A stretch of 63,950 bases of DNA, counting the filler, from Hyphochytrium catenoides (taxonomy: Eukaryota > Protista > Hyphochytriomycota): NCBI GenBank assembly GCA_900088475.1. It is 7 parts of 7 records of this genome, joined end to end, with 100 filler letters (N's around TTAATTAATTAA, not from the genome) between each part and the next. Parts side by side here need not be neighbours in the genome. Positions count along the whole stretch, not along the records: positions 34,301 to 55,219 come from FLMG01002295.1; 6 more parts are not named here. One strand, given 5' to 3'. Below the pieces are notes generated by a model, which worked only from the letters and a program-made list of their open reading frames with translations, did no database searches and had not been told where the DNA came from. The translations under genes and the position numbers were made by a program. Shown here piece after piece: positions 34,301-53,500 of this stretch (position 1 is its first letter; each line of letters starts with the position of its first letter).

Positions 34301-34772
34301 GAGAGAGAGAGAGAGAGAGAGAGAGAGTGTGTGACTCTGTGTGAGAATGTGTGTGAGGGAAGGAGATTGAGGAAGAGAAGTGTGCGAAGGAGAAAGAAAA
34401 TCAAAAGAGAGAGGAAGGCAAACGAGAGAGAGAGAGAGAGAGACAGAGAGAGAGAGAAAGACAGAGGGATAGAGCGAGGAGCGAGAGTGTCGTCAAGGAC
34501 AGAAGGAGCCTATCTACCCGGGGGAGGCAGGAGGGGCTCAGTCATCGAAGGATGAGGGAGCGGCGAGGAGGAGAGAGAAAAAGCAGGATGACGAAGACAA
34601 CCCGAGAGGGGGATGAGCTGGGCAGGATGGGAAGAATGGCAAGAAAGAAGCCGTGCGGGGCGAGAGAGAGCTAGGGAGAGAGAAACGGAGAGGTAGACAG
34701 AGAGAGACAGGAGAGAAAAAGAGACAGGAAGAGGGCGATAGAGAGAGACGGGAGCTGAAAGGAGCGACTCAC

Positions 34773-35000
34773 CTGCCGCTGCCATCCCAGAAAAGCCCCG
34801 CCGTCGTAGGCGAGGAACGCCCTAAACTTGGTCAGGCTCGCGACAAGACTTCCATCGTCTCCTCCAATCTCTTCCTCTTCTCCTTTTCCCACCTTCTCTC
34901 TTCGCTGATTCGCTACTCTCTCTTTCTGTCTCTCTCTCTCTGTGTCTGACTCCTCCTCATCGCCCTTCTCCCGTCTCCCTTCCTGCTGGCCCTGGACCAT
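34773..35000 (-). CDS. truA: tRNA pseudouridine synthase A (TruA family) N-terminal exon; remainder not seen, probably beyond scaffold edge
   Basis: KFRAFLAYDGGAFLGWQRQ (YDGxxFxGWQxQ motif) followed by donor gtgagt. Confidence 0.7.
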
Positions 35001-35296
35001 CGCGGAGCCACAGGAAACACAAGGCGCTGCTCTTATCTCTTGCTGAGAGATTATGGTGAAACCCCCACCGTGACGCAGGGCCAGACTGACAGATCAGGCG
35101 AGCGCGATCAGCGGCGTGCCCCAACCGACGGGTGGGGACGAGAAGAGCGAGAGGGAGAGAGGNNNNNNNNNNNNNNNNNNNNNNNNNNNNNNNNNNNNNN
35201 NNNNNNNNNNNNNNNNNNNNNNNNNNNNNNNNNNNNNNNNNNNNNNNNNNNNNNNNNNNNNNNGAGAGAGAGAAAAAGAAAGAGAGAGAAAAAGAA

Positions 35297-35334
<38 letters not shown>

Positions 35335-36168
35335 GAAGTGATGAGAAGATGCGAACACGTCTCCTTTTATCGCCAGGCACATCCCCAACCCGTGAACGAA
35401 CTACAATAGACAACCTATTCACACAGACCTTACTACAACACCGAACCGAAGGGTTTGGAGGGAAGCACTCACAACAAACTCGCTCTCTTTCTGGCATTCT
35501 TATGAACCACTTCTGCTTCTTACAGAGCAGCGCGGAGAGCATCACTGTCGACCTCTCCAAAGAGAACCAGCGAATGGGATCGAGTCTGGAGACTCTGTCT
35601 GAGTCGACCTGAACGCTATCATCACACAGGAAGTTGTAAGTCAGTCACACATACTTCAGGAGAGCCATCGACTCATTTGTCATTATGTCCTGGCCACAGA
35701 TAGTGAGCCAGAGAACGGAGAGTGAAGGGAGCGGGAGAGAGAAAGAGCGAGAATGCGAGCGGTTCGAGACAAAGAGAGAGCGTGGAAGAGAGAGAGAGGG
35801 GGGGAGAGAAAGAGAGAGAGAGAGGAAGAGAGACTTTGCAAGTAGAAGCGGCAGCAAGCAATAGAAGAGCAGGTCACAGACAGAGCTAAAGGCCATCGCT
35901 ACTTACAAAGCGTAGTATAAAATAGATTATTAGTCGCAAGACACATTCCCAACACTTCCATCAACCCGCAAAGATTAGCTTTGCAAAGACAGACCGAGAG
36001 AGCGAGAGAACATTAGAAAAACAAGAGCCATAGAGAAGAGAGAGAGAGGCGAAGCAGTTGAAGAGAAAAGTTAGACGCTACCCTCTAATGTCTGCTTAAG
36101 ACCAGAGCCTAAAGCCTCAGCAAATAAAAGAAGAGACAGCACATGAGAACTCGAGAAGGATCAATCGG

Positions 36169-39100
36169 TCAAGGGTCCGCGCTGAGGTCTTCGCCTGCGT
36201 TGAGCCGAAGGACGATTGGCACGCGCTTCCTCTTGACTATTGCTTCTTCTTCTTCCTGCTTTACTTGCGCGTCCGACTGCCGCCGTCGTTTTGTTCCCTG
36301 GGTGGCTGCGGAAGAGGGGAGAAGCGCGTAAAGCTGTCTCTCTTTCTCTTCCAAATCTTCCAGCAGTTCTTCTTCCTTCCTATTCAATGCACTGCCTTCA
36401 TTCTCATGACTGATCCCCTCAGAGCTGCTCTGGTGCTGGGTGTTGACTTTCACTTCTTGTGTAGGTTGAGATAAAGACCTACGCTCCCGCAAACTCCTCC
36501 GTGACCCTCTCTCTCTTTTCTCCCGCTCCCGAGGCTCTTCCGTCTCCTGGGTTGGCTCCTCCTGCGCCGAAGGCCTCAAGGACCTACGTGCCTGAGGTTT
36601 CCTCTCCTCTTTTAGTTCTACTACCTTACTGGGCTGCTCTTCTCGCCGGCGAGAGGAAGAGCGGACCCCAATCTCGGTGTTTTTTTCTAGAGGCACTGGT
36701 TCTTCCTCGACCTTGGGTGTGACGTTGAGGACGGGCTTAGAAGGGCTGGCGGAGACTATGCGGAGAGAAGAGCGGCGAGGTAACTCTCTTGGCCCGTCGC
36801 CCTCTTTCTGTTTCTTGTTAGCTCCGCGTTCTGCAGGCGCCTTCCTTTTCGTGGGAGTGGAGCGTGCAGACTTTCTTCTTGTTGTCCGTACCGTACCGTT
36901 CTTTTTGAAGCAGTCAGTGCACGTCCAAACATCCTGCTTTCTCGCTTCTTCTTCCGTGAGGCCGACACAAGGGGGATGGAACCAACCGCTGCAGACCTCG
37001 CAACCGATAAAGAAGCTCCCAGCCTCGTCCTCAGCGGCACATTTCCGACATCTCTAGAGAATTCAAGAGGACATTAGATGTGCAAGATGCTAACTTGAAA
37101 GAGACGAGGTGGTGCACAGACTTTGGAGAGGGAGGGAGGGGCAGAGGCAACGAAGAGAATCTGTTTACAAAAGGGAGATAGAAGTGCCTTATACCGAGTC
37201 ATCGTTCTTGCTACAGCTGCCGCAAACCCAAGAGGTTAGAGCTTCCGCTGCCTCTTCTGACAGTCCGACGCAGGGAGGATGGTACCATCGCTCGCATAGG
37301 TCGCACCTGCAAAGGAGAGAAGGGTGAGCTAGAGCTTAGAGAGTAGACGCAGTGCAGTGGCTTCCATATAACGTACCCAACCATCATTAGCGAAGTATCG
37401 TCCTCATAGCTCTTCCCACAGACGCACCGGTCACTGCTCAAGCCATCTGAAGCGCGAAAGGCGTGTCCACATTTGTGATGGTTAGCTTCTCTAACGAGTG
37501 GACAGGATAGAGCACCAGAGGAGTATATATTTATCGTTAACAGTGCATTTACCTTCGTCGTCACCAACTTCTGGCTGAACGTGGTCCTCGCAATAAAAGA
37601 CGCTCTCTCCCTCGTTGCCCGTGGGCTGGACCCTCCCCTTCGTTGATAATGCACAGCGAAGATGGTAACTGTGCTTGCAATCAGCTCTAAAGCAGCCAAT
37701 TGTCGCCCCTCGCTGCAAAAGAACGAACGCGGCGTTAAAATCATCGACAAAGAAGAAAGTGAAGACCGACCTGGAAAAGGAGAACGAGACAAGGAAGACA
37801 GGAGGAGACTATACCTGTTTGCAGACGGTGCAGATTAGCATTCTTCCTCGTTTGAGCGCCTTCTCCACGTTTCTATAGTTCTTCTTTTCATCAATAAACA
37901 CTTCAGGAGACCACTCTGCGCACCGCTGATGGACCCAGCACTTCTCTTTCTTCTGCTCTTTGGAGCCTACCGCAAACGAGAAAGGAAGGATGGGCCCTTC
38001 GACTTTATCCTCTTCTCCCATGTCCTCATAACCTCGTTCGGCAAGGGCTTTGCGGACGTTAATGCAAAGGCCGCAACGCTTAGGAGCTTGTTCATCGTCG
38101 TCCTCTTCCCCTTCCTCGTCATTGCTCTCTTTTGACGGCAGAGGTCTAGCCTTCCCGCCAGTGGAAGCCCGCCTGCTACCTCCGCCTCGCCCTCCTGCAT
38201 CTGTGAGCTTCCTCTTTTTACCTTTAATAGACGCAGGCGAAGCTTCGTCCCGGTCCTCCTTGTGCTTCAAGACCAGCCTGCAAACTCTGAGGGTTGATAG
38301 ACAGAAGGGAAAGGAGGCACAGCTTGAGTAAAAGCCTAAGAAAGGCATAGTACGATTGGCAGCAAAACGTTACCTTGCAGGCTTTTTAGCGGCTTTGCAC
38401 TTGGGGCATTTGCTCAGTTTCTTGACCGGTTGAGGAGACTCTTCTTCGTCCTCTTCGTCCTCTTCCTCCTCTTCGTCAACCCCGTCTTCGCAGACTACTT
38501 GTTGTCCTTTGACGGTGATGACACGCTTGCCCTTGAGGTGCTCAGGACAAATGATGAGAAAATTCAGGGCTCGGAAAAACTTCCCTTTGGGCAGACACTT
38601 GGCATGAAAGGCACGCGGACATCGGATACATTGTAACAGCGGACGAGACGAGGAGCCAGAGCATCTGTGACAGTTGTGCTGTGGACAAGCAAAGGAGGGC
38701 TCCCCTTTCCCTTCTAAGGATACGGCAAGCGCCTTTCCTGACTCTGTCCTCCACTGCTGCAGACATCTGGTGTGATAAAATCGGCCACAGCTCTCGTCTT
38801 CGCAGTTCCAAACTAGAGGACAGGCGTCACGTATAGGTCAGAAGAACGCACGCATACAGTGGTTTGGGCAGAAGGTGCTGGCTCCAACAAAGTAGACTTG
38901 ACTGAAGAAGGAAAACAATTGCACCCAACATCAAAATGCCCTGGAGCCCTACTACTGACGGCGTAACGAGCAAATGTTGGAAGGCGACGTGGCAAAGAAT
39001 GAGGCTGCCTTTGCCGGGGGCACATTGAAGCCAGGACACGAAAAAGAAGTACGGACAAGGGTAAGATAGAGCGTAGAGAACTCACCGCCATTCTTCGTGT

Positions 39101-42100
39101 TATCTCTTCCTGCATGGCCACAGATGAGGCACATATGCTTCTGTGCCGCACAGTCAGGACATTGCCAGGTGTCGTCCTCTGGAGCCTCGTCCAGGCTGAG
39201 ACATTCCACATGGAAAGAGCGCATACACGGACCATCGCAGAGAATGAGAAGGCCTCCCTCTCCACAAAGAGCGCAGATGTCCGAGGTGGACTCCTCTTCA
39301 TCTCCGTCCTGAACGCCATCCTCGTCTTCCTCCATCTCTTCCTCTGAGGCTTCCTCCTCTTCCACTGGCTCTTCTTCTTCGTCCTCTTCCTCTGAGTCTT
39401 CGGCTGCTTTTTTCCCCCTTCCTGTGCTCTTCGTTCCTCGGGTGTTCTTTTTCTTTGCTGTTTCCTTCTTCTTGTCCTCTTTCGACTTCTTTTCCTTGCT
39501 CTTCTTTGGTGTGACAAAACTCTCTCTCGTCTTTGTCCTGCAGCTTCTAACCATAGAAGTGCGAAGTCCCTCTAACATCTTCGTAGCCATTTCCTGCTGT
39601 TTAGGAACGAACTGTTTCTTCATTACAGAGATCCGACGAAGAAGTTCACACGCCTGGTCCAGCTCTCGGCTATCGACTTCTCCATCAGCTTGAGCCTCTT
39701 TTAGGTTCTCGACAGCGGTCTTGACTTGTTTGAGAAAGTCTGCGCAAGACAATAGCCCAGAAGGTGACGGACGAAGAGACACAGCGGTAAGACTGGGTGC
39801 CTTTCCCTACTACGTTACCCGCGCTTGCTTCTTATTATCTAAAGCCCTGGAATGTCTATCTTCTTCCCACGTGACTGCCATCACTCACTGCTTCTGGTGT
39901 TTAGACCCGTGATTTTCCAGGGAGAAAGAGAAGTACACGTCCGACTTTTCTCTTCGCAGTTCTTCCGCCTCTCTTACCTGATCTAGTCTTCGCGCTCTCA
40001 AACGGCGCTCCATCCTCGAGCCTGGTCAGTAACAACTCACAGTTGATGGCGTCCGGAAGGACTTTGGACCAGAACTCTGGATCATCCACGGAGATGTTCT
40101 GGTCGCCTACATTCACCGTAAAAGTAGAACGATCCACCTTGTGTCCTAATGCGCTCGCCGTCTTCACCTGCTCTACCACACGAACGTGCGCATTCTTCTC
40201 CAGGATCTAAAGAGACGAGACAAAAACAGACAGAGAAAGAGATGACAGTCAGAAGAAGGGGTCGGATGCCGAGTTACAAGTGATCAGATAGACAATCTAG
40301 CCCATGACGGCTTTAGGGGATGCGGAGTAGTACTCCCTGGAGTACGAGGAAGGATTGACTCATAACGGCACACCTGTTCAATGTCCAGCTCTAAGAACTT
40401 CTTGCTGTCTTCCTCATTGTCATCCAGCATAGCATAAGCCCCTTGCTTCAAGAGTATCTCCAGCTCCTTTGCGCTTATCTTCTCTCCTTTGCTAGTCTCC
40501 GAGAAGGAGACAGTACCTAGCACAGCGTGTTCCAGGCCAAGCTTCCGGCTAGCCCGCTCGAACATCTCTGCCTCAAAAGTCTTCCTGGTCACCAAGCGGT
40601 ACACTTTGACTGCCTTCTCCTGGCCGATACGATGACACCGAGCTTGGGCTTGAACGTCATTCTAGAGCAATGATTGAAATCTTTAGGGAAACTCTCCAAA
40701 CGAACCTGGTGCGACACATGAATCTTCAAAGAAACAGGCATTTGACGCAAGAGAATGACACAGACATGACATAACCAGCGAAGGGCGCAAGGCTGAGATC
40801 TTCGGCAGAAGCAACGGACAACGCTCAGGAAGGACTCCATATGTGTGTGTACCTGTGGGTTCCAGTCACTGTCAAAAATAATGACAGTGTCAGCAGCCAC
40901 CAGATTGATACCGACGCCTCCAGCGCGTGTGCTCAGTAAAAAGATAAAGGAGTCTGACTCAGGGGCGGAGAAGCGGTCGATGGCGCTCTGTCTATCATTG
41001 CCCTGGACTGAGCCGTCGAGTCGCTCGCAGCTATAGCCTTTAGCAGCGCAGTAGTCAGCCAGGATGTCTAGCAATATGACAAATTGCGAGAAGATGAGCA
41101 CTTTGTGGCCCTCCGCGCGCAGCTTTGGCAAAAGCTTATCGACCAACACCTATGATGCAATGAGAGAAGGTGTGAGATTCAAACCTCTTGATCGCTTGCT
41201 CCCATACATCCAAAATGACCACTGGCACTCTGTCTACGTGCCACTGTACCCTTTGAAGCTTTCTTCTTCAATGTCCTATAAGTGTCATCGTGTCTACCCA
41301 TCGCGTCTCCGTGCCCATTTACAAGCACACGTCCGAGATCTCTGCCCTCCTCCAGTGTCCCGAAACAAGTGCCTTACCAGCTTTCCTGAGCATTCAATGG
41401 TCTTCTTCATCCGTTCTTCGGTGGCAGGTGCCTCTCCGAGCTCCTCCATCTCCTTCTCCTCCACCCCCTTGAGAAGAAAAGGATGGTTGCAGCACTTCCT
41501 GAGTTCCATGTGGATATTCAATAGCTGCGGGGTGACGCCCTTTGTCACCTTCTGCAAGAAAGAACGGTTCTTCTCGAAGATGGCACGATAATAGCGTTTC
41601 TGCAAGATCGTCAGCTCTACGTCAATGATCGTTTCCTCCTTCGGGGGGAGGCACTTTTCAACGTCCTCCTTCACTCTACGTAGTATATGAGGAGCGATCT
41701 CTGCTTGGAGCTCCAGCACCTGACTTTGGGTCTGCAGGTTTCCAAACCTCCGCTCAAAATCCACCTTGTCGCCGAACTTATTGGGCTCTATGAAGTTCAG
41801 CAGAGTCCAAAGTTCTTGAGTGTTGTTCTGCAGTGGCGTGCCCGTAAGCAAGAGTCTAAAGTCTGTGTGCAAGATTTTGAAAAGCTTCAAGGCCTTGGAG
41901 TTCTGGCTCTTCAGCCTATGCGCTTCGTCAACAACCAGATACCGCCAGTGGACCCACTGGAACTCCTCATAGTCGGCAATGACCGTCTCGTAGGTTGTCA
42001 AAAGGACATTAAACTTCAGCAGACTTCTCTTTTGATGAGGAAAGAACCACTCGTACTGACGTAGCCACGCCCGGAGGTTCTTCCCTTTGCCTCCAAGTCC

Positions 42101-45100
42101 TGAAGACTCATGGTAGAGACAGACATTCATATCCGTCCAGTTCTCAAACTCTCTTTTCCAGTGCTGGATGGTAGATAGAGGGACGACAACCAGAAAAGGC
42201 CCGCGTAGGTTATCTACGGTGTGAATATAGTTGAGCGATGACACCACTTGGACGGTCTTTCCCAGGCCCATTTCATCCGCCAAAATCAAGTTGCGGCCCA
42301 GATACCGGCCCCTGCAGATCCAGTTCAGTCCTTCAACCTGCGATCAAAAGACAAATTGGGGAAAAGAATTACTAGGTGTAGGTCAACAACCAACCATATC
42401 GTATAGACCAGAGTGCTCAGCCATAATCGCTTGAGGAAAGGGTCGGCACAAGGATTACATTTCAGCGAACAGTCGTGGCAGGTACCTGGTATTTGAATAG
42501 TTTGTTCCCATTTTTAAACTCCGGGCTCTCAGTATAGGGCTTGAAAGCAGTACGTGGGCGCTCCACATAGACCACACCGTGTGGAGTTATCCGGCCAATG
42601 GAGAAGAGGCTGCTTTCCTCCTTCCTCTGCTTATTTTTCTTCGTTGTCTCTTCGTCAACTTCCTGAAACTCCTCATCATCGCTGTCCTGCTTGTCCTCTT
42701 TTTCCGTCTTTGGGATTAACCTTTCTTCTCTGCTTTCCTGACCGTCATCGTCTTGGTCTTCATCGTCCTCCACCTCATCTTCATCATCGGAGCTACCGGA
42801 CTTGTCCCCATCCCCCTCTTCCTTCCCTTCTTCTTCTTCTGAGTCGGAACCCGACGTTTTCTGCATGACAGACTTGAGGATGTCCTCTCTCTCTGTCTCT
42901 AGAAGAACCGCCTGTTTCAGATTGCCTGACTGCAACTCTTCGATGGCTAGAATTTCCTTGATCGTATCCTTTGACTCCAGTTTGCCCGCCATAGCGTCTG
43001 CCAGCAGCCTGTGCATTGCCCCAAAGTTTGGATGGTCCTCAGACCACAGCTGGAAGTCATTGACCTTCTTCTCCACACTTTGATTAACTGGAGGGCGAGA
43101 CTGATCCGTAGTCAATATGCCAAATTGCTGATGCTCGAAGGGCAGCTGTGGCAAGCAGAGCCTGCCTTGAGGATCAAGGAGACATGGCGAGTACTTCTCG
43201 GCAACAGCAGAAAAGGGTCTGCGGGTCCTAAGTGCCAGTTCTACTTCTCCTGCGACGCTCTTGAGCCTCTCTATGACTTGGTGAAAGCGCATCTGGTGTA
43301 TTCTGAGGCCGTCAATGGCAACAATGAGGTCTCCGACCTGGATAATTCCTGATGCCTTTGCGACACTGGGAACTCCTTCTTGGAACTCATGAAAACCAAC
43401 CACCTGAAGATGAGAAGCAGTCCTTAGACCCAATGCGCTATCTGGCCCATGATGAAGTCCTATGCTCATTGCTGTTTTCAGCCATATCAGACCGTGCAGA
43501 CCACTAGCACTTAAGCGAAACCAAGACAAGAGCCTTCTCGGCAACATTCAGAACCCATTTCCACCCATCTTCTAGCTCATTCCAGCATGCTTACCTCTAC
43601 GCCGATCCTAGTGGATTCGTCCTTCAATAAGCTCATTCCCAGCCCAAAATTCGGATCCTTCACCAGTTTGACAGTGTATTCCAGACAGGGCTCGTCGTCC
43701 TCCCGAGTCTCACGTCCCTCATAGTGTCGCAGCACATCACTGATGGCGCTTGGAACAGGCTTATTCGCTGTCACGAACTCCACCAACTCCGCCGTAACAA
43801 GGGCGACTTCTGGATCAGTCTACGGAAGTTCCCCAAAGGGCAGAATAGCGAAGTGAGAAGCGACATCGAGATATTGGAGATGACAAAGCGAAGAAATAAC
43901 AGGCGAAGAAAGAACTGTGTAGGGGAAGAAAGAACTGTGTGCGCGCACACGCTGCGTAATGACAGATTAACGATAGCTCAGGGACAGCCTCTACGGAAAA
44001 AGAGATCAATAGCACTTACCCCAGGTACATCCAGGACATACTGGTAAGCAGTGGTGTGAGGCCCACACTGAAGCAGAGCCTCTCGACCTGGCGCCTCGCC
44101 CTTAGTTAGGGCTGCAAAGGCAGATATTTGCGAGGAAATCTGCCGGAAGTAGCCGTCGACTACATGTTTCATTTTGCCTCCTGGACCTCTCTTCAGCAGC
44201 TTCAAGTTCCAAGGCATCTTGTCCTTGGCTTTCTGTAGATGTTTGTTGCATCTGCCCTGATGGTTCCCTGGGCGAGAGCAAAAAGGAGATCGGCTGCAAT
44301 GTGCTTGCATGGTCGTAAGCTCTTCAGGTTGCACAATGCGTTGCTTCGTGCAACAGACTTGCTGGCACATAGTGCGCGTTATCTCCTCTTCCGAGGGCAC
44401 TGCTGATATGACTTTGTACCTGTTAATAAGGTCGGAGAGCTGTGGCACCCCTCTCATGTCCTCCTCTGTCTCCCAGGTGCAATCTCTGTATGGAAGAGAC
44501 TTCCATTGGACTAAATACTCGGTGACCTTTTCACCCACCACGTTTTTGGGGTTATCGCCCGTGGAGTCCTGTGCCTGCTTCTGCGCTGTCTTCACATCGT
44601 AGGGAGTCCTCTTCAGCTTAGTGCACCTTTCGCAGAGCCAGGTCCCGCTAGGTACCTCAGATAAAGGCGGCTTTAGGCAATAAATGTGATATTCTCCGTC
44701 ACAAGCATCGCAAAGTATAGACTGATCTGCGTCCTTCTCCTCCTTGCACGAGCAGCAACCCTTGGACCATGGTGCCCAGCCCTTCACCTCTTTAGACCAG
44801 GCGGTTGCAGACGCAATCCACTCATGGTATAGGCGCTCAAAGTAAGTCTCCAAGTGATCCGCAGCAGCCCAGATCTCGGATGTCTCGTCATTGTACAGCT
44901 TACAGTTCCGGAAGACCAAGCGGACGTCTGAGACAAACATAATGTGGCACTTTTGACCTCGGTAAAAACTCTTCTTCATACGCTTGGCAATAGTTCCGAA
45001 GTCCATAGGGCTAGTAACGTACTCCAGGTAGTCATCAACAGCGCTGCATGAGGGTGGGGAAATACTTTAGAGCAAGACGTAGAGACCGCAATACTCACTG

Positions 45101-46245
45101 TAAACTATATAGCGAAGGGTGAAAAGGCTCAATGGCAAGAGCAGCCTATAAGCTTTTCAAAGAAAACGACAAGCAGGAGCATGCACCATTAGATGTCGAA
45201 ACGCCGCCGCAATCAGCACGAAGTATAGAAGCAGCCGTGTCTTACGTGACATCTACTGGTTCCATGAACGGCTCCGCCTCCGGCTCATGGGTAAGTCTTC
45301 CAAGAATGGCTTCATAGCGGACGAATGCTTCTTTGGTATGGTCATTTAGAAAGGAGAGAGAGACCGACGACGTTTCTGCAGAATCTTCTTTCAGTCGCGC
45401 CTTCCTCGGTATAGTCTTTCTGCGACTAGCGTCGATAACTCTGTGGCTCATAATGTGATCAATTTCTATCACGATATCCTTAAGCTCGTCAACGTCATGC
45501 AGCTCATCAATGCCATCGTCGAGCAGCTTCCTTTCGTATCTACACGTAGAGCGAACAACAATAAGAAGATGTGGAGGTGTCGCCAGCCGGATGATGTTAC
45601 GTGAGGGCTAAAACGCTCTGCAACAAAAAGGCTTATAATGCAAGCAAACAGGCAGACTATGGGCGTACTTTTGAAGTCTGGGCTTGTCGAATCGCCCGTA
45701 GACCGGGTGGTTCTCGATCTCTTGCCGCGTGAGCCAAGCGGTGTGCAGAAAGGAAAGCCCGCGGTATTTCGCATGAAATTCCTCATTGAGTGTGTTTTGG
45801 TTGATGCGTCGCCCTATAAACAGCTCAATCCTCGGATCATCCTAGCCAATAAGCTCAAATGTCAGTCCATCGTTCGGGGCACAAAATCTATCTCGACTGT
45901 CTTGTCGCACGGTTTTACCTCTTCAATGTCAGCGGGATGCCTCCATTCTATCACTTCCTGCTTGGCGTCATCGCTTGATTCGCCTTCATCGTCCGTTCCG
46001 AGTTTCATATCAAACTTGTACTTGACGCCTGCTGATGACCGGCGCCTAGAGCGGCCCTGCAGAATGAGAAGCGTACAGCACAGACAGGGCGATGAAATAG
46101 TGAGGCATAAATGTCAGCAGGGCCCTCTTCATGCTATACGACTGTAGAGACGCACCGTATCTGCAAGCATTGCTTCATCCTGGACGCTGTCTTCTGCATC
46201 CAAAGGATGATCTTCATCTTCGATGGCTGCTTTCCGGCGTGGCAT
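36169..46245 (-). CDS. CHD-family SNF2 chromatin remodeler: chromo, split chromo with bromo+PHD, C3H motif, PDZ, SNF2 ATPase/helicase-C, NSD-like PHD array, ePHD, two PHDs
   Basis: ATG at 46245 ([10 protein letters not shown]). Helicase motifs are intact: [34 protein letters not shown] and DSDWNPQ|[14 protein letters not shown]. Bromo: PFMEPVD...PMDFGTI...[13 protein letters not shown]: FGLGMSL...[12 protein letters not shown]. Multiple C4HC3 fingers. Ends EDLSADP* at 36169. Confidence 0.92.
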
Positions 46246-47135
46246 CACGTCAACTTATAGCAGCTGGTGCCCCCAAGTGTAGGCTTCCTGGGGCTCAGAG
46301 CGAAGAGCCCAATCAGCAAATGTAGCGATCCCAGATGTCTACGGCGCAACAGCTATCGCCATACCAATTGATTGCATAGAGACTATTGGGATAAGAATCA
46401 CTACTTGGACCAGCAGCGAAGACTTGCAGTGACAGCCACCGCGAAACGAAATATTACAAAATTGAAAACACTTCAACTTCCCGCCAAAGCCGATCCAGCA
46501 GTTTGGGAAGCGAGACACACCAACGTCGCGTCCACCTGTGAAGCGGTAGACGGTCACCTCAGCTAAAGGACAAGCGTCCCGATAACCTTTCCATCAATGG
46601 CCCTTCACAGAGCTCCGAACTCCTCTCTGTGGCGACGTTATGCCGGTAACGGAGCTTCAAAAGTGGGTAAGAAGGTCTGTTTGTGTCTGAAATGTAGCTC
46701 TTGAAGACCGCAGAGCTTTTTACTGAAGCTGCATCCCGAAATTACTCCAAAGAAAATCTGCGTCTCCAATTCCCCCAGAACCAAAGACATGCCAAGGGCA
46801 GCGAAAGAGAAAGAGAGAGAATTACAGTAATATAGCTTAATCGTATTCCGCTCACTAGGTACGATGTATATTGTCTGGCAGTAAAACATCCTGAGGATAT
46901 TCCGCTCTATCCCCATCTCTCCTCCAGTCTCCTCCTCGATCTCTCCCTCAAGGCTTCCTAAGAGGAACCTTCCATTGTTGCACAAAGGAGCGCACCTTTT
47001 GTAGGCGGAATAAAGCGCAACCTCACAAAGTTCTTGGCGATGACGGCTGAAAACACAAATTAGATGGAGTGGGCGATTATTCTTGGATTAATGTCAATTA
47101 TGTGGCAAATGACTCGATATTGTAGCATACGATTG

Positions 47136-47776: not shown

Positions 47777-48871
47777 ATGGATCAGGCGTCCAGCTCCGTT
47801 GCTCCAACGTATGACGGCCAACAGCCACAACAACATGGCACAGCTCAGCCACAAGGTTCCTCTCAAGGGATGACGGGAAACGTTGGCGCGCTACCTTCCT
47901 TACCAAACGCCATGCCTGGCATGCCGTCCGGAATGGCGCTGCCCGGCTATGTCATGACGCCCGAGCAGCACTCTCAGTATATGAACAACATAGCCATGGT
48001 CTGGCCCGCCTGAGTTCCTAACCCCTGGATTCTGGCAGTTTGCTAGACTAACCCTCTTTGACCTTGCTCATGCACTCCAGATGTACCAGATGAATCCCGG
48101 AGGAGTGATGTACATGCATCCTTACATGGTAAAGGGCCTGAGCACCGCTCTGTCTACTTGACCACCTCTATTATGGGATATGACTTGGTCCTTTCTCCTC
48201 AAAGTATAGATGAGAAGCCTGTTTTTGCGCTAGTGGGGATTCCTTCTCGTTTTGACATATCCCTTCCCTTCATCCCCCTCTTAGATGGCGCAGGCTGCTG
48301 GCCAAGGAGCCGCTGGAAGTGCGCAAGGAAACGCGGCTGCGGCAGCGCCAGGTCGCGTCGTTCCAGTACCCGTTCCGGCTCCACCAGTGGTAGAGGAAGA
48401 GCCAGTCTATGTAAACGCTAAGCAGTACCACAGAATTATGATCCGACGGCAGCAGAGGGCAAAGCTGGAGGCAAAGCTACCTCGACAGAGGAAGGTAAGA
48501 GGAGCAGCCAACACCTTGCTCCTGCACTTGGGTCCCTGCCAATACACCAAAGGTCTCAGCGCTCTTATGCCTCCTATGAGTCTTCTATTAACAGAGGCGG
48601 GGCCTATCTTTATTCCACCTTCCTGCCTCTGGCCAGAAACCGATCTACATAGATCAAGATGTCTTGCTTCTTCTGGCTGACACCTTTCTAACTTGTCTCC
48701 TTACGTTCTTGGTAGCCCTTCCTCCATGAGTCACGACATAAGCATGCGATGCGGCGACTGCGAGGGCCTGGAGGTCGCTTTCTTACCAAAGAGGAGATCA
48801 GAGTGTACAAAGAGACAGGCAAACTACCTCTGGACGAGGACGAACCCCCAAAAAGAAGTAAGCCCATTTAG
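47777..48871 (+). CDS. NFYA: Nuclear transcription factor Y subunit A (CBF-B/HAP2), 4 exons (47777-47998, 48081-48128, 48285-48494, 48716-48871), 211 aa
   Basis: EEPVYVNAKQYHRIMIRRQQRAKLE...RK|PFLHESRHKHAMRRLRGPGGRFLT. All introns are phase-0 GT-AG. Q/M-rich N-terminus. Confidence 0.95.
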
Positions 48872-50515: not shown

Positions 50516-53500
50516 NNNNNNNNNNNNNNNNNNNNNNNNNNNGTCCCTAAACAAAGCGTCATCGTCATAGTTATCAACAGCCTTCTTTCCGTTCTTGTTC
50601 TTTTCTCCTGCCCGCTTCGCTAGCTTCTCAAGCTTCCCAAAGGCTGCCGATTGACAAAGGAGGAAGAGACAGAGACCGACAACGAGAGTGATAGATATCA
50701 GCCAGAGACCAACTTGAGCCAAGAGCGCTTTGCTAGACCTTCAGCCCCAGGCAACAGCAAGGGCTGGAGGAAGAAGCGCGCCAGAGAAGACTGAACATCT
50801 GATAGAAACAGATAGCGACATTTAGCAACGACGTCCTTCTCCTACTCACCCGATCCCAAGATCGTTCCTGCACCTCCTCTTGCGGGTGCTGCGGGGCTTC
50901 GGATCTCTTTCTCAGGGTCTAGATCCGCAAACTCTTGGTCCACGTAGTCCACACAAGTGTCCGATTTCTATTAAAGCAGTAGGAAAGAGTGCACAGGAAG
51001 AGCATGATATGCTAAGCCTATCGTCCTGCTAATGAAACAATAGGGAGAAGCCAGTCCGGGTCTAAAAAACGTTCGGGACAAGCTGAACAAAGAGGCGAGC
51101 AAAGACCTAGACCGAGAAGAGACATTATTTTGAACCAGGGCACAGCGCTAGAAGGATAGAACAGGAATAACTGTTGACGAGAGGAACCGTCGAGTTTTAC
51201 AGAGTAGGACAGGGTCAGGAGCAGCGGCGCCTACAATGTTGGGCTTCCATGGTGGCACAATCTCCTTGGCAAGCAGTTTATCCCAGTCCAATCCGCGGTA
51301 GAAGGGATGGTCCTTGATCTCTGAGAACTTTTGTCCAAGCCTTTCCGTAGGGTCCTTGCAGAGCAGCTAAAGGAGACGAGAGCCAGCATAGTGAGAGAAC
51401 ACTTTCAGTCGTGAACTAAGCCCATGATCTAAGATCTAAACGGTTCCCCCCTCTCTTTCTCCGGCAAATCGTCCCGTTGTCTCTACATTCAGAACGACTA
51501 AGCTCTATTGTCTTTCTCTATTTAGATTATGTCTTCCTATCGGCCATCTTCCCAACTGCATGCTCTGAGGCCTTATAGCTCCATCTCCTTTCCTCTCTCT
51601 TACCCCTCTCAAAAGGTCCTTGAGCTCCTCAGAGACGAGTTGGTTTTCCGGGAACTTGACCGGCTCTTCCTTTATCTTCTTGTACATGCGGTCAATGTTA
51701 GAGTCAAAGAATGGACTCTTCCCACAGCTCATTTCATAGATCAGGACGCCTAGGCTCCACCAGTCGATCATTTTGCCGTACTGCCGCTGTTCCTTGGGTG
51801 CCAGCAGCTCGGGCGCAGTGTACTGCGGGGATCCCGCCATAGTCTTGGCGCCTTTGTAGTCTTGCACATGCATCTTTGCGAGCCCAAAGTCCACGAGGCC
51901 AATGTGCCCAGAGGCGTCAATCATGACGTTCTCCGGCTTCAGATCCCTACATAAATGAGAGAAGGATGACGCCAGATGTAAGCTCTACGCGGGGAGACAC
52001 TCGCGAAGTTGAGGACAGTCGACGGTTATTCTGCACGTCGACGCCCATACTCTACTGACTGGGACGTTATCCAAGGAGATTCACAAGCCGCACTTTATAT
52101 TTGTCTCCCAACTATCTAATAGGCTCATACCTGTACAGAATGTCATGCTTATGCAGGTGGTGGATGGCCAGCATCAGCTCAGCTCCATAGAATTTGGCCC
52201 TTGCCGGTGCGATCTTACACGTAGCGCCCCTACTCATATGATGGAAGAGGTCTCCCCCTGCGTAGAACTTCATCCCTAGAAAGAGCTTGCTGCGGGACTG
52301 GAAAGCGAGTTGTAGAGACGCGATGAAGGGATGGTGGATGGTCTGCCCGATGTTCATCTCCGTGAAAGAGCTCTCCACGTCGTACTTCGTCATCTTCAGT
52401 TTATCGAGGATCTTGATCGCATAGACCCTACCATCCGACTTCTTCTTGGCGACAACCACCTGACGGGACACAAGACAACCAGAGAGACAGAGAGAGAGAG
52501 AGAAAGAGAGCCAAAACATTGACCAAAGGGGTGAGCACTCGCTAGCGCTGACTACGTTGTATAAAGGAAAATTCGAGACAAAGACTTTGAGGGTGACGAG
52601 CCTTCCAGAGCATAAAAACGTCCATCAATCCTTCATGTCTTACCGTCCCAAATCCTCCCTTGCCGATGACATGATGGACGGTGAAATCATTCATAGAGAG
52701 AGCCAGAGCTCTCCGTGTATGATAGACTCTATTATGGTCATCTTTCAGGACAAATGGAGTCGCGGTGGCTTTTAGTGCCGCATAGGCGTCTCCAGCCTTC
52801 TCCAGGTCAATCTTCATAGTGATCTTGGTGATCTTGTCGCCGCCTGGACCGAAGCGGATCTCATGCGTCCAGCGTTCGAGAATCTCCGTCCGATCTGCGC
52901 GTGATCTAACTAGGGTTGTGCCCTGGACGATGGTCTTGCGCTTGTGGGGCTAATCAGAGCAAGAGCGCACAAGGATGTTAACGAGACGATCCTCAGTGCC
53001 AGCGTAGAATGGATTAAGAGAGATCCTGGCGTTCGACAGTGGATACGCGACCGTCTTCAGAAAGGTTGCTCAAAAATGACGTAAGTGACCAAAAGAAAGA
53101 GAGAGTAATAGAAAGGGTAAATGGCCTGTCTCCGCTAGTGTCCCCTTCCGCAGCTGGTCTTACCTGCACACTCTCCACATTCAACTCATAAACCTTGAGG
53201 TTACGAGTGTAGAGCTCACAAAAGGCGACAAGCCCTTCTCTGCCATAGAAATCTCCACCAAATGCGAGAGCTCGAGGGTAGTTGGACGTCAAGATTAAGT
53301 CTACCAAAAAGGTACGACAACATGCGGTCAGACACGCAAGAGAATGACGAAAGAAAGCTCATGCCAGCGGTAAGCGGGAGAGGGCAGAGGAGAGGATGGT
53401 TTTCAACTAGCAGGGAGACAGGACGAGCGAAAAGAAAGTAGGATTTGTCTCTCTTATAACCTTTGCTGAAGTAGAACACGAAGTCCTCCATGCCTCTTCT

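What the first reader, a model, noticed from the sequence alone, without database searches (positions are those of the whole stretch)
44410..45470. CHD second chromodomain apparently split by an inserted bromodomain+PHD cassette
Seen: after chromodomain 1 (IELFIGRR...[17 protein letters not shown], about 45670-45840), the first strand of chromodomain 2 ([10 protein letters not shown], about 45440-45469) is separated from its remainder ([17 protein letters not shown], about 44410-44520). The gap is roughly 240 aa and contains a full bromodomain and a C4HC3 PHD. Established: CHD chromo-2 reads xxVDRIlxxR-short loop-YLVKWxxLxYxxxTWE, and animal, yeast and plant CHDs carry no bromodomain. Inference: a nested domain insertion puts acetyl-lysine and H3-tail readers on the module that gates the ATPase.
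Basis: partly seen in the sequence, partly recalled or inferred. Interest (0 to 1): 0.75.

Follow-up and report, generated by a model that had tools for sequence, protein, structure and literature searches.

The report
Bromodomain-PHD cassette nested in CHD chromodomain
This is an intron-containing gene for a CHD-type chromatin remodeler whose second chromodomain is interrupted, between its first and second strands, by about 240 residues holding a bromodomain and a PHD finger; the domain order was already listed for oomycetes and Tetrahymena, but I found no paper that reads it as a split chromodomain.

Summary
On the minus strand, about 46245 to 37500, lies a spliced CHD-type remodeler gene. 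After splicing, [13 protein letters not shown] (45478-45440) is followed by a full bromodomain, a C4HC3 PHD and then [22 protein letters not shown] plus helix (44532-44404), 240 residues later.

Evidence for a split chromodomain:
- Pfam's Chromo match starts at profile position 13-18 in the window and five homologs, so strand 1 is missing locally.
- Joining the upstream motif to the downstream part extends the match to position 2-3 and raises the score in three lineages.
- At least 29 homologs keep the motif, about 56-60 residues after chromo 1 where measured and ahead of a highly variable spacer.
- Two AlphaFold2 models of the closest homolog (35-39% identical) make it a 10-11-residue strand. 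It persists without chromo 1, and the local pre-strand-2 segment is disordered.

Limits: the window's own spliced protein could not be folded. No coordinates were returned, so pairing is inferred from the secondary-structure strings. Function is untested.

The architecture is not new. It is tabulated for Phytophthora PITG_03401 (2014) and described for Tetrahymena CHD1. Homologs also occur in a diatom, a brown alga, a pelagophyte and a foraminiferan. My limited searches found no paper describing the nested topology.

The parts
37494..46245 (-). Whole CHD-type remodeler gene (multi-exon; 3' end approximate)
   Evidence: tblastn of homolog P0002 is colinear from 45829 to 37581; the ATG and first six exons were modelled by hand with GT-AG introns.
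45710..45829 (-). Chromodomain 1 (IELFIGRR...[24 protein letters not shown]), compact type
   Evidence: Pfam Chromo match is weak (E 0.12). A family profile of chromo 1 plus linker hits the CHD1 double chromodomain 2b2u at E 8e-10. Strands at 19-27, 34-40 and 49-52 in the homolog model.
45440..45478 (-). Strand 1 of chromodomain 2 ([13 protein letters not shown]), upstream of the insert
   Evidence: It is the only segment of the 648-aa N-terminus that matches the family's strand-1 profile (8.9 bits). It aligns with VTIDCIVSHK / VEVEKILD in homologs. The equivalent segment is an 11-residue strand with pLDDT about 80 in the homolog models. It supplies Chromo profile positions 2-12 when fused.
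45347..45439 (-). Short basic/Ser-rich spacer between strand 1 and the bromodomain
   Evidence: This region is the most variable in the family, carrying more than 200 insert columns in alignment A3 and an HMG box in one subgroup that includes a diatom.
45246..45346 (-). Bromodomain, N-terminal part (end of exon 4)
   Evidence: Aligns with the homologs' bromodomain start ...PFxxPVD.
45044..45245 (-). 202-nt GT-AG intron inside the bromodomain
   Evidence: GTAAGACA...TCATGCAG. Splicing restores the frame and a gap-free bromodomain.
44815..45043 (-). Bromodomain, C-terminal part, including NCKLYN with the acetyl-lysine-anchoring Asn
   Evidence: Pfam Bromodomain E 5.7e-12, profile 22-83. The Asn and the NCK motif are at least 90% conserved in 50 sequences. 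The homolog model aligns to solved bromodomains at Z 14-16.
44623..44757 (-). C4HC3 PHD finger
   Evidence: Pfam PHD E 2.2e-10. Best solved relatives are CHD4/CHD5 PHD2, PHF12, KDM5, DPF3, AIRE and TRIM24.
44533..44622 (-). PHD-to-strand-2 linker ([10 protein letters not shown]...DNPKNVV)
   Evidence: Length and sequence vary among the closest homologs. The equivalent segment in P0002 is disordered, with pLDDT below 50.
44404..44532 (-). Rest of chromodomain 2: strands 2 and 3 plus helix ([22 protein letters not shown]...LINRYKVI)
   Evidence: Pfam Chromo E 3.2e-10 to 5.9e-12, profile 13-50 only. YLVKW..L.Y..CTWE is nearly invariant in the family.
44239..44370 (-). Conserved Cys/His-rich motif after chromo 2 (CQQVCC...[21 protein letters not shown])
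   Evidence: Conserved in the four closest homologs. No Pfam match.
43233..43684 (-). PDZ domain (split by an intron) between the chromodomains and the ATPase
   Evidence: Pfam PDZ E 5.6e-6. Weaker PDZ hits occur at the same place in P0002, P0008 and P0033.
40287..42343 (-). SNF2 ATPase lobes (SNF2-rel_dom, Helicase_C), several exons
   Evidence: Pfam SNF2-rel_dom E 5.5e-79 and Helicase_C E 1.2e-20. Best solved relative is human CHD1 at 258 bits.
37494..39290 (-). C-terminal NSD-like PHD cluster and zf-HC5HC2H
   Evidence: Pfam PHD-1st_NSD 2.6e-8, PHDvar_NSD 8e-12, PHD_NSD 4.4e-10 and zf-HC5HC2H 3.5e-8.

Best explanation
The locus encodes a CHD-family ATP-dependent nucleosome remodeler. Its domain order is chromo 1, linker, chromo 2 strand 1, [spacer, bromodomain, PHD, linker], chromo 2 strands 2-3 and helix, Cys/His motif, PDZ, SNF2 ATPase and a C-terminal PHD cluster. 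The roughly 240-residue bromodomain-PHD cassette is a nested insertion in the strand 1-strand 2 hairpin loop of chromodomain 2. The two separated parts are predicted to reassemble into one chromo fold. This structural part is shown by sequence analysis and by models of a homolog. The rest is inferred. The bromodomain keeps the acetyl-lysine-anchoring Asn. The PHD resembles fingers that read the unmodified histone H3 tail. The cassette therefore probably tethers the remodeler to acetylated nucleosomes with unmethylated H3K4. In yeast Chd1 the double chromodomain gates DNA access to the ATPase. Both ends of the cassette are anchored in the chromo 2 hairpin, so tail binding may also be coupled to release of that gate.
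For: - The spliced order and coordinates are confirmed.
- Pfam finds a bromodomain, a PHD and a Chromo match that lacks profile positions 1-12 in the window and 1-14 to 1-17 in five homologs.
- Joining the upstream motif to the downstream part extends Chromo coverage to positions 2-3 and raises the score: window 45.8 to 52.5 bits, P0002 37.3 to 40.8, P0008 45.9 to 56.8.
- The motif lies 56-60 residues after chromo 1 strand 2 in most homologs where I measured it, and about 248-251 residues (window) or 271-422 residues (homologs) before strand 2.
- It is a conservation island (DPS..EVEKILD.REEEV) ahead of a spacer with more than 200 insert columns.
- It is the single best match to the family's strand-1 profile within the window's N-terminus.
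- AlphaFold2 on P0002:59-483 (pLDDT 80) gives a strand at 98-108 on the motif, strands at 363-371 and 380-383, a helix at 390-400, and disorder at 333-358 just before strand 2.
- A second model without chromo 1 (P0002:150-483, pLDDT 82.7) keeps the strand at 7-16 with pLDDT 76-83. The only partner of comparable length is strand 273-280.
- P0002 is one intron-less ORF.
- The ATPase is CHD-like.
Against: - The window's own spliced protein could not be submitted for folding. The models are of a homolog 35-39% identical in this region.
- No coordinates or predicted-error maps were returned, so strand pairing is deduced from secondary-structure strings and strand lengths.
- Structure searches were swamped by bromodomain hits and gave no chromodomain superposition.
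- The window has a local NVVGEKV just before EYLVQW that resembles the end of a canonical strand 1 and could contribute to the hairpin.
- The Pfam gain is modest and I ran no decoy control.
- The profile search of solved structures aligned chromo 1 and the linker but stopped before strand 1 of chromo 2.
- No RNA run was listed, so the introns are unconfirmed.
- Ligand binding and gating are entirely untested.
Confidence: 0.8

Rival explanations
1. Bromodomain and PHD sit between two separate chromodomains, as the literature draws it. On this reading [10 protein letters not shown] is only the tail of the chromo 1 linker, and chromo 2 is a complete or truncated domain that uses local residues (KNVVGEKV) as strand 1.
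For: [10 protein letters not shown] resembles the HP1-type strand-1 end, turn and strand-2 start (sequence; my knowledge of HP1). Diatom-type homologs have KVVKVKxKKYLVKW at the same place. The window's own protein was not modelled.
Against: Pfam never aligns the local segment to profile positions 1-12. The local segment is not conserved in the closest homologs and is disordered in both models. The upstream motif is conserved, sits at the canonical spacing and forms a long strand independently of chromo 1.
Confidence: 0.12
2. The PHD plus following chromodomain is a Mi-2/CHD3-5-like PHD2-chromo 1 unit, and the upstream chromo-like region is an unrelated addition.
For: phmmer aligns window PHD-to-chromo (query 99-195) in one stretch to CHD4 residues 455-565, entries 6ryr and 6q3m.
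Against: There is only one N-terminal PHD. No second chromodomain follows. The chromodomain after the PHD lacks its own strand 1, whereas (from my knowledge of CHD4) CHD4 chromo 1 has one directly after PHD2. The upstream part matches the CHD1 double chromodomain through chromo 1 and the linker. The ATPase scores higher against CHD1 than CHD4 (258 against 220 bits).
Confidence: 0.05
3. The order is an artefact of gene modelling or assembly, with two genes or misjoined exons.
For: The introns were modelled by hand and no RNA run was listed.
Against: The motif and the bromodomain start lie in one exon, and the bromodomain end, PHD and chromo 2 rest lie in the next. About 60 independent proteins show the colinear bromodomain-PHD-chromo 2 order. 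One of them is an intron-less ORF.
Confidence: 0.02

Closest known systems
Oomycete 'Chromodomain-containing protein (D)', Phytophthora infestans PITG_03401 (Matari & Blair 2014, PMC4030286, Table 2)
   Same: [quoted passage not shown] The window shows every item.
   Different: The paper only tabulates domains and does not note that chromo 2 is split. I did not compare the PITG_03401 sequence itself. The window gene is intron-rich, and the closest database relative is only 35-39% identical.
Tetrahymena thermophila CHD1 (TTHERM_00193800; PMC12361904, citing Saettone 2018 and Wahab 2020)
   Same: A CHD remodeler with a bromodomain drawn 'between its two chromodomains' plus PHD fingers. It clusters with CHD6-9, and JGI likewise names some homologs found here CHD7.
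   Different: The review calls the architecture unique to Tetrahymena. Searches show it also in a diatom, a brown alga, a pelagophyte and a foraminiferan. I did not examine the Tetrahymena sequence, so whether its chromo 2 is split the same way is untested.
CHD1 / yeast Chd1 double chromodomain plus ATPase (PDB 2b2u/2b2w, 3mwy)
   Same: Chromo 1 and the linker align at E 8e-10. The ATPase lobe is closest to human CHD1 at 258 bits. The tandem chromodomains lie N-terminal to the motor.
   Different: CHD1 chromo 2 is contiguous and has no bromodomain, PHD or PDZ. The two CHD1 tryptophans that hold H3K4me3 in chromo 1 correspond to Tyr and Leu here (KYRGL, by my reading of the alignment). I found no SANT-SLIDE domain.
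CHD3/4/5 (Mi-2) PHD-PHD-chromo-chromo remodelers
   Same: A PHD of the same sequence type is the best solved match, and it lies upstream of a chromodomain and a CHD-like ATPase.
   Different: Here there is a single PHD, it lies inside chromo 2 rather than before chromo 1, and it is accompanied by a bromodomain.
Combinatorial bromodomain/PHD reader cassettes (CBP/p300 bromodomain-PHD, TRIM24 and BPTF PHD-bromodomain)
   Same: An adjacent acetyl-lysine reader and H3-tail reader. Foldseek's top hits are p300/CBP bromodomain-PHD modules. From my knowledge, p300 is also a precedent for nested domains, with a RING inside its PHD.
   Different: The rigid-body fit is poor (rmsd 12-17 A). In those proteins the cassette is not inserted into another reader domain or attached to a remodeling motor.

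Membership tests
CHD (chromodomain-helicase-DNA-binding) remodelers | Snf2-type two-lobe ATPase most similar to CHD ATPases | tested here: met
   SNF2-rel_dom E 5.5e-79 and Helicase_C E 1.2e-20. Top solved matches are human CHD1 at 258 bits and yeast Chd1 at 232, then SNF2h 221 and CHD4 220.
CHD (chromodomain-helicase-DNA-binding) remodelers | Tandem chromodomains N-terminal to the ATPase | tested here: met
   Chromo 1 is weak in Pfam (E 0.12), but the family profile hits the CHD1 double chromodomain at E 8e-10. Chromo 2 is present but discontinuous.
CHD (chromodomain-helicase-DNA-binding) remodelers | Subfamily-specific C-terminal modules (SANT-SLIDE in CHD1; BRK in CHD6-9) | tested here: not met
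   Pfam on the C-terminal exons shows NSD-like PHDs and zf-HC5HC2H only. P0002 shows the same. Short exons may have been missed.
Bromodomain-bearing CHD of stramenopiles, alveolates and rhizarians (oomycete protein D / Tetrahymena CHD1) | [quoted passage not shown] | tested here: met
   for the window, for homologs, and PMC4030286 Table 2 for the published order.
Bromodomain-bearing CHD of stramenopiles, alveolates and rhizarians (oomycete protein D / Tetrahymena CHD1) | Sequence orthology to PITG_03401 or TTHERM_00193800 themselves | not tested
   Neither sequence could be fetched by accession. Relationship is inferred from identical architecture and from named relatives in Nitzschia, Ectocarpus, a pelagophyte and Bolivina.
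Chromodomain (PF00385) for chromo 2 | Three-stranded sheet plus C-terminal helix from one contiguous segment of about 50 residues | tested here: not met
   The contiguous segment covers only profile 13-50. Full coverage (2-50) needs the segment 240 residues upstream. The fold is therefore predicted to be complete but discontinuous.
Chromodomain (PF00385) for chromo 2 | Aromatic cage for methyl-lysine (HP1 Tyr, Trp, Tyr/Phe positions) | tested here: inconclusive
   By eye against HP1, the positions read Ile, Trp and Leu in the window. This rests on my own alignment from memory of HP1 and not on a tool result.
Bromodomain (PF00439) | Four-helix bundle with the conserved Asn that anchors acetyl-lysine and the ZA-loop Tyr/PMD motif | tested here: met
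   Pfam E 5.7e-12. NCKLYN and DYL..V..PMD are present. N, C, K, N, Y and P are at least 90% conserved in 50 sequences. The homolog model aligns to solved bromodomains at Z 14-16 and rmsd 1.3-2.5 A. Binding itself was not tested.
PHD finger (PF00628) | C4HC3 zinc-ligand pattern | tested here: met
   CxxC-x11-CxxC-x4-H-x2-C-x15-CxxC at residues 328-372 of the spliced model. Pfam E 2.2e-10, full profile 1-47.
Mi-2 / CHD3-5 | Two PHD fingers preceding two contiguous chromodomains | tested here: not met
   There is one PHD and it lies inside chromo 2. No chromodomain follows it other than the chromo 2 remainder.

The most novel reading that the evidence does not exclude
The nested cassette may act as an allosteric switch. 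Both of its ends are anchored in the chromo 2 strand 1-strand 2 hairpin. Engagement of an acetylated or H3K4-unmodified tail by the bromodomain-PHD pair could then strain or reposition the double chromodomain. That would release its gate on the ATPase and give a remodeler whose motor is licensed directly by histone acetylation. The same loop accepts a further HMG box in one subgroup that includes a diatom, so it may be an evolvable insertion site for regulatory readers, possibly ancestral to stramenopiles, alveolates and rhizarians.
Probability: 0.2. Interest if true: 0.7.

Novelty: new member of a known kind. Interest (0 to 1): 0.5.

Why it matters
CHD chromodomains are regulators of the ATPase as well as histone readers. 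A natural family in which two further histone readers are inserted into one chromodomain offers a way to test how reader domains communicate with a remodeling motor. Tractable hosts exist, including Tetrahymena, Phytophthora and diatoms. The survey also corrects a recent statement that a bromodomain-bearing CHD is unique to Tetrahymena. The architecture occurs in stramenopiles (a diatom, a brown alga, a pelagophyte and, by published domain list, oomycetes), in a foraminiferan, and, by the literature, in a ciliate. Domain diagrams showing a bromodomain between two chromodomains miss that standard profile scans truncate chromo 2, because its first strand lies 250-420 residues upstream.

Tried and rejected
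- RNA support: no sequencing run was listed for 43900-46300.
- The window's own protein is not in the protein collections; the best identity was about 40%. A spliced sequence has no reference, so it could not be handed to structure prediction, and I folded the closest homolog instead.
- Structure searches with both models were filled by bromodomain matches and said nothing about the chromodomain: pdb_via_wide, Foldseek pdb and atlas.
- No model coordinates are exposed, so contacts could not be measured.
- The profile search of solved structures with chromo 1 through strand 1 matched the CHD1 double chromodomain only through the linker.
- No CHD6-9 chromodomain pair appeared among the solved-structure hits for a direct comparison.
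- The protein-atlas search was busy.
- Phrase searches for a split, interrupted or discontinuous chromodomain found nothing relevant.
- I considered a decoy control for the in-silico deletion (random upstream segments fused to the same C-terminal part).
- The Mi-2-like reading and the artefact reading were rejected for the reasons given under rivals.
- The organism was not identified. The neighbours are ordinary nuclear genes: an NF-YA-like ORF and a protein kinase.
Full report
**What is in the sequence**

Between about 46245 and 37500 the minus strand carries a multi-exon eukaryotic gene. Stop-free segments in three frames and the raw sequence gave a hand-built model of the first six exons. 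They are 46245-46156, 46056-45919, 45841-45669, 45539-45246, 45043-44020 and 43819-43595. All introns are GT-AG and 77-202 nt long.

In the spliced N-terminus of 648 residues the features are:
- Chromo 1 at residues about 81-120 (IELFIGRR...[17 protein letters not shown]).
- A linker, then [13 protein letters not shown] at residues 155-167 (window 45478-45440).
- A bromodomain at residues about 199-308, split by the 202-nt intron 45245-45044.
- A C4HC3 PHD at residues 328-372.
- A 30-residue linker, then [22 protein letters not shown] plus a helix at residues 403-445 (window 44532-44404).

Pfam confirms Bromodomain (E 5.7e-12), PHD (2.2e-10) and Chromo (3.2e-10) in the single exon-5 ORF. Downstream it finds PDZ (5.6e-6), SNF2-rel_dom (5.5e-79) and Helicase_C (1.2e-20). 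The last exons carry NSD-like PHDs and zf-HC5HC2H.

No RNA run was listed to verify splicing. However, the junction inside the bromodomain gives a gap-free alignment with homologs. The closest homolog is encoded as one intron-less ORF.

**Is chromo 2 really split?** Five lines of evidence agree.

1. Pfam's Chromo alignment begins at profile position 13 in the window. It begins at 15-18 in five homologs from different subgroups. From my knowledge of the Pfam consensus, positions 1-12 correspond to strand 1.
2. Joining the upstream segment to the downstream part extends coverage to positions 2-3. It raises the score in the window (45.8 to 52.5 bits), in P0002 (37.3 to 40.8) and in P0008 (45.9 to 56.8). 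I ran no decoy control.
3. An exhaustive protein search gave about 60 proteins with colinear bromodomain, PHD and chromo 2 remainder.
   - In at least 29 of them I located a motif of the type [DN]P.[YFW].E[VI]E[KR][IV]LD or VT[VI][ED][KC]I[LV].HK.
   - It sits 56-60 residues after chromo 1 strand 2 in most homologs where I measured it, and 271-422 residues before strand 2. In the window that second distance is about 248-251 residues.
   - It is a conservation island ahead of a spacer that carries more than 200 insert columns.
   - A profile of this motif built without the window finds [13 protein letters not shown] as its only match in the window's N-terminus.
4. The local segment before strand 2 (KNVVGEKV in the window) is not conserved in the nearest homologs.
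5. AlphaFold2 models support reassembly of the fold.
   - The closest homolog, P0002:59-483, was modelled with a 50-sequence alignment at mean pLDDT 80.
   - The motif is an 11-residue strand (98-108, pLDDT about 77-86).
   - It is followed by the bromodomain helices, the PHD, a helix and a disordered stretch (333-358, pLDDT below 50).
   - Then come strands 363-371 and 380-383 and a helix at 390-400.
   - A second model without chromo 1 and its linker (P0002:150-483, pLDDT 82.7) keeps the strand at 7-16 with pLDDT 76-83.
   - The only other strands in that construct are the 3-residue PHD hairpin and strands 273-280 and 289-292. The partner of a 10-residue strand can therefore hardly be anything but strand 2 of chromo 2.

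It is not met in the homolog.

**Caveats**
- I could not fold the window's own spliced protein. It has no reference and is not in the collections.
- The models came without coordinates, so pairing is deduced rather than measured.
- Structure searches were dominated by bromodomain hits.
- The profile search of solved structures aligned chromo 1 and the linker to the CHD1 tandem chromodomains (E 8e-10) but stopped before strand 1 of chromo 2.
- The window's NVVGEKV resembles the end of a canonical strand 1. It may add to the hairpin next to the turn. That would place the insertion late in strand 1 rather than strictly in the loop.

**What family is it?**

The ATPase is CHD-like. The best solved matches are human CHD1 at 258 bits, yeast Chd1 at 232 and CHD4 at 220. 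JGI names some homologs CHD7.

[quoted passage not shown] It equals the oomycete 'Chromodomain-containing protein (D)', PITG_03401, tabulated in 2014 (PMC4030286). A 2025 review describes Tetrahymena CHD1 as having a bromodomain between its two chromodomains and calls this unique (PMC12361904).

Named relatives found here are from Nitzschia inconspicua, Ectocarpus fasciculatus, Pelagophyceae sp. CCMP2097 and the foraminiferan Bolivina argentea. The architecture is therefore widespread in stramenopiles and rhizarians and, by the literature, present in a ciliate. I found no paper that describes the chromodomain as split. The search covers open-access text only.

**How it probably works (inference)**

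The bromodomain keeps the Asn of NCKLYN and the ZA-loop motifs. These are at least 90% conserved in 50 sequences. The homolog model superposes on solved bromodomains at Z 14-16.

The PHD is closest to CHD4/CHD5 PHD2, PHF12, KDM5, DPF3, AIRE, PHF21A and TRIM24. From my knowledge these mostly read the unmodified H3 N-terminus. By eye, neither chromodomain keeps a complete aromatic cage.

I therefore favour a model in which the cassette tethers the enzyme to acetylated nucleosomes with unmethylated H3K4. In yeast Chd1 the double chromodomain gates the ATPase (3mwy; Hauk et al. 2010, from my knowledge). An insertion anchored at both ends in chromo 2 could couple tail binding to that gate. I give this coupling about 20%. 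Nothing here tests it.

**Rivals**
- Two independent chromodomains with a local strand 1: about 12%.
- A Mi-2-like PHD-chromo unit, suggested by a single-stretch alignment to CHD4 455-565: about 5%. Arguments against it are the single PHD, the missing strand 1, the lack of a further chromodomain, and the CHD1-like upstream region.
- An assembly or annotation artefact: about 2%, contradicted by about 60 colinear homologs and an intron-less ortholog.

**Verdict**

The nested-insertion interpretation is supported at about 80% for the structural claim. The gene is a new member of an already catalogued family of bromodomain-bearing CHD remodelers. What appears undescribed is the split-chromodomain topology and how broadly it is distributed. 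Interest is moderate at 0.5.

Noticed in passing
window 43684-43233 (-): A PDZ domain, split by an intron, lies between chromo 2 and the ATPase (Pfam E 5.6e-6). Weaker PDZ hits occur at the same position in P0002, P0008 and P0033. I know of no PDZ in animal, yeast or plant CHD remodelers, though it is bracketed in the oomycete table.
   Followed up: partly
window 44370-44239 (-): A Cys/His-rich motif directly follows chromo 2 (CQQVCC...[21 protein letters not shown]). It is conserved as CQLPCCA...C.KD.FC.LG..H.G.C in the four closest homologs and has no Pfam match. It may be an undescribed zinc knuckle.
   Followed up: partly
homologs P0047, P0077, P0179 (Nitzschia inconspicua), P0171-P0181: In one subgroup that includes the diatom Nitzschia, the same strand 1-strand 2 insert also carries an HMG box ahead of the bromodomain. 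The strand 1-to-strand 2 distance there is about 410-420 residues. The loop therefore hosts up to three domains.
   Followed up: partly
L001:2001-7997 (metagenome scaffold encoding P0002): The closest homolog is a single intron-less ORF, whereas the window gene has at least five introns in its first 2.7 kb and more downstream. Intron density thus differs greatly between related lineages.
   Followed up: no
literature (PMC12361904 against and PMC4030286): A 2025 review states that a bromodomain in a CHD protein is unique to Tetrahymena. The protein searches here and a 2014 oomycete table contradict that.
   Followed up: yes
window 48285-48680 (+) and 51505-52519 (-): The neighbouring genes are an ORF with a CBF-B/NF-YA domain (E 4.7e-11) and two exons of a protein kinase (E 2.6e-23 and 3.5e-17).
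   Followed up: no
window 34301-35833: The piece starts with a strongly purine-skewed stretch (GC skew 0.25, AT skew 0.37) made of several GA/AG microsatellite arrays.
   Followed up: partly
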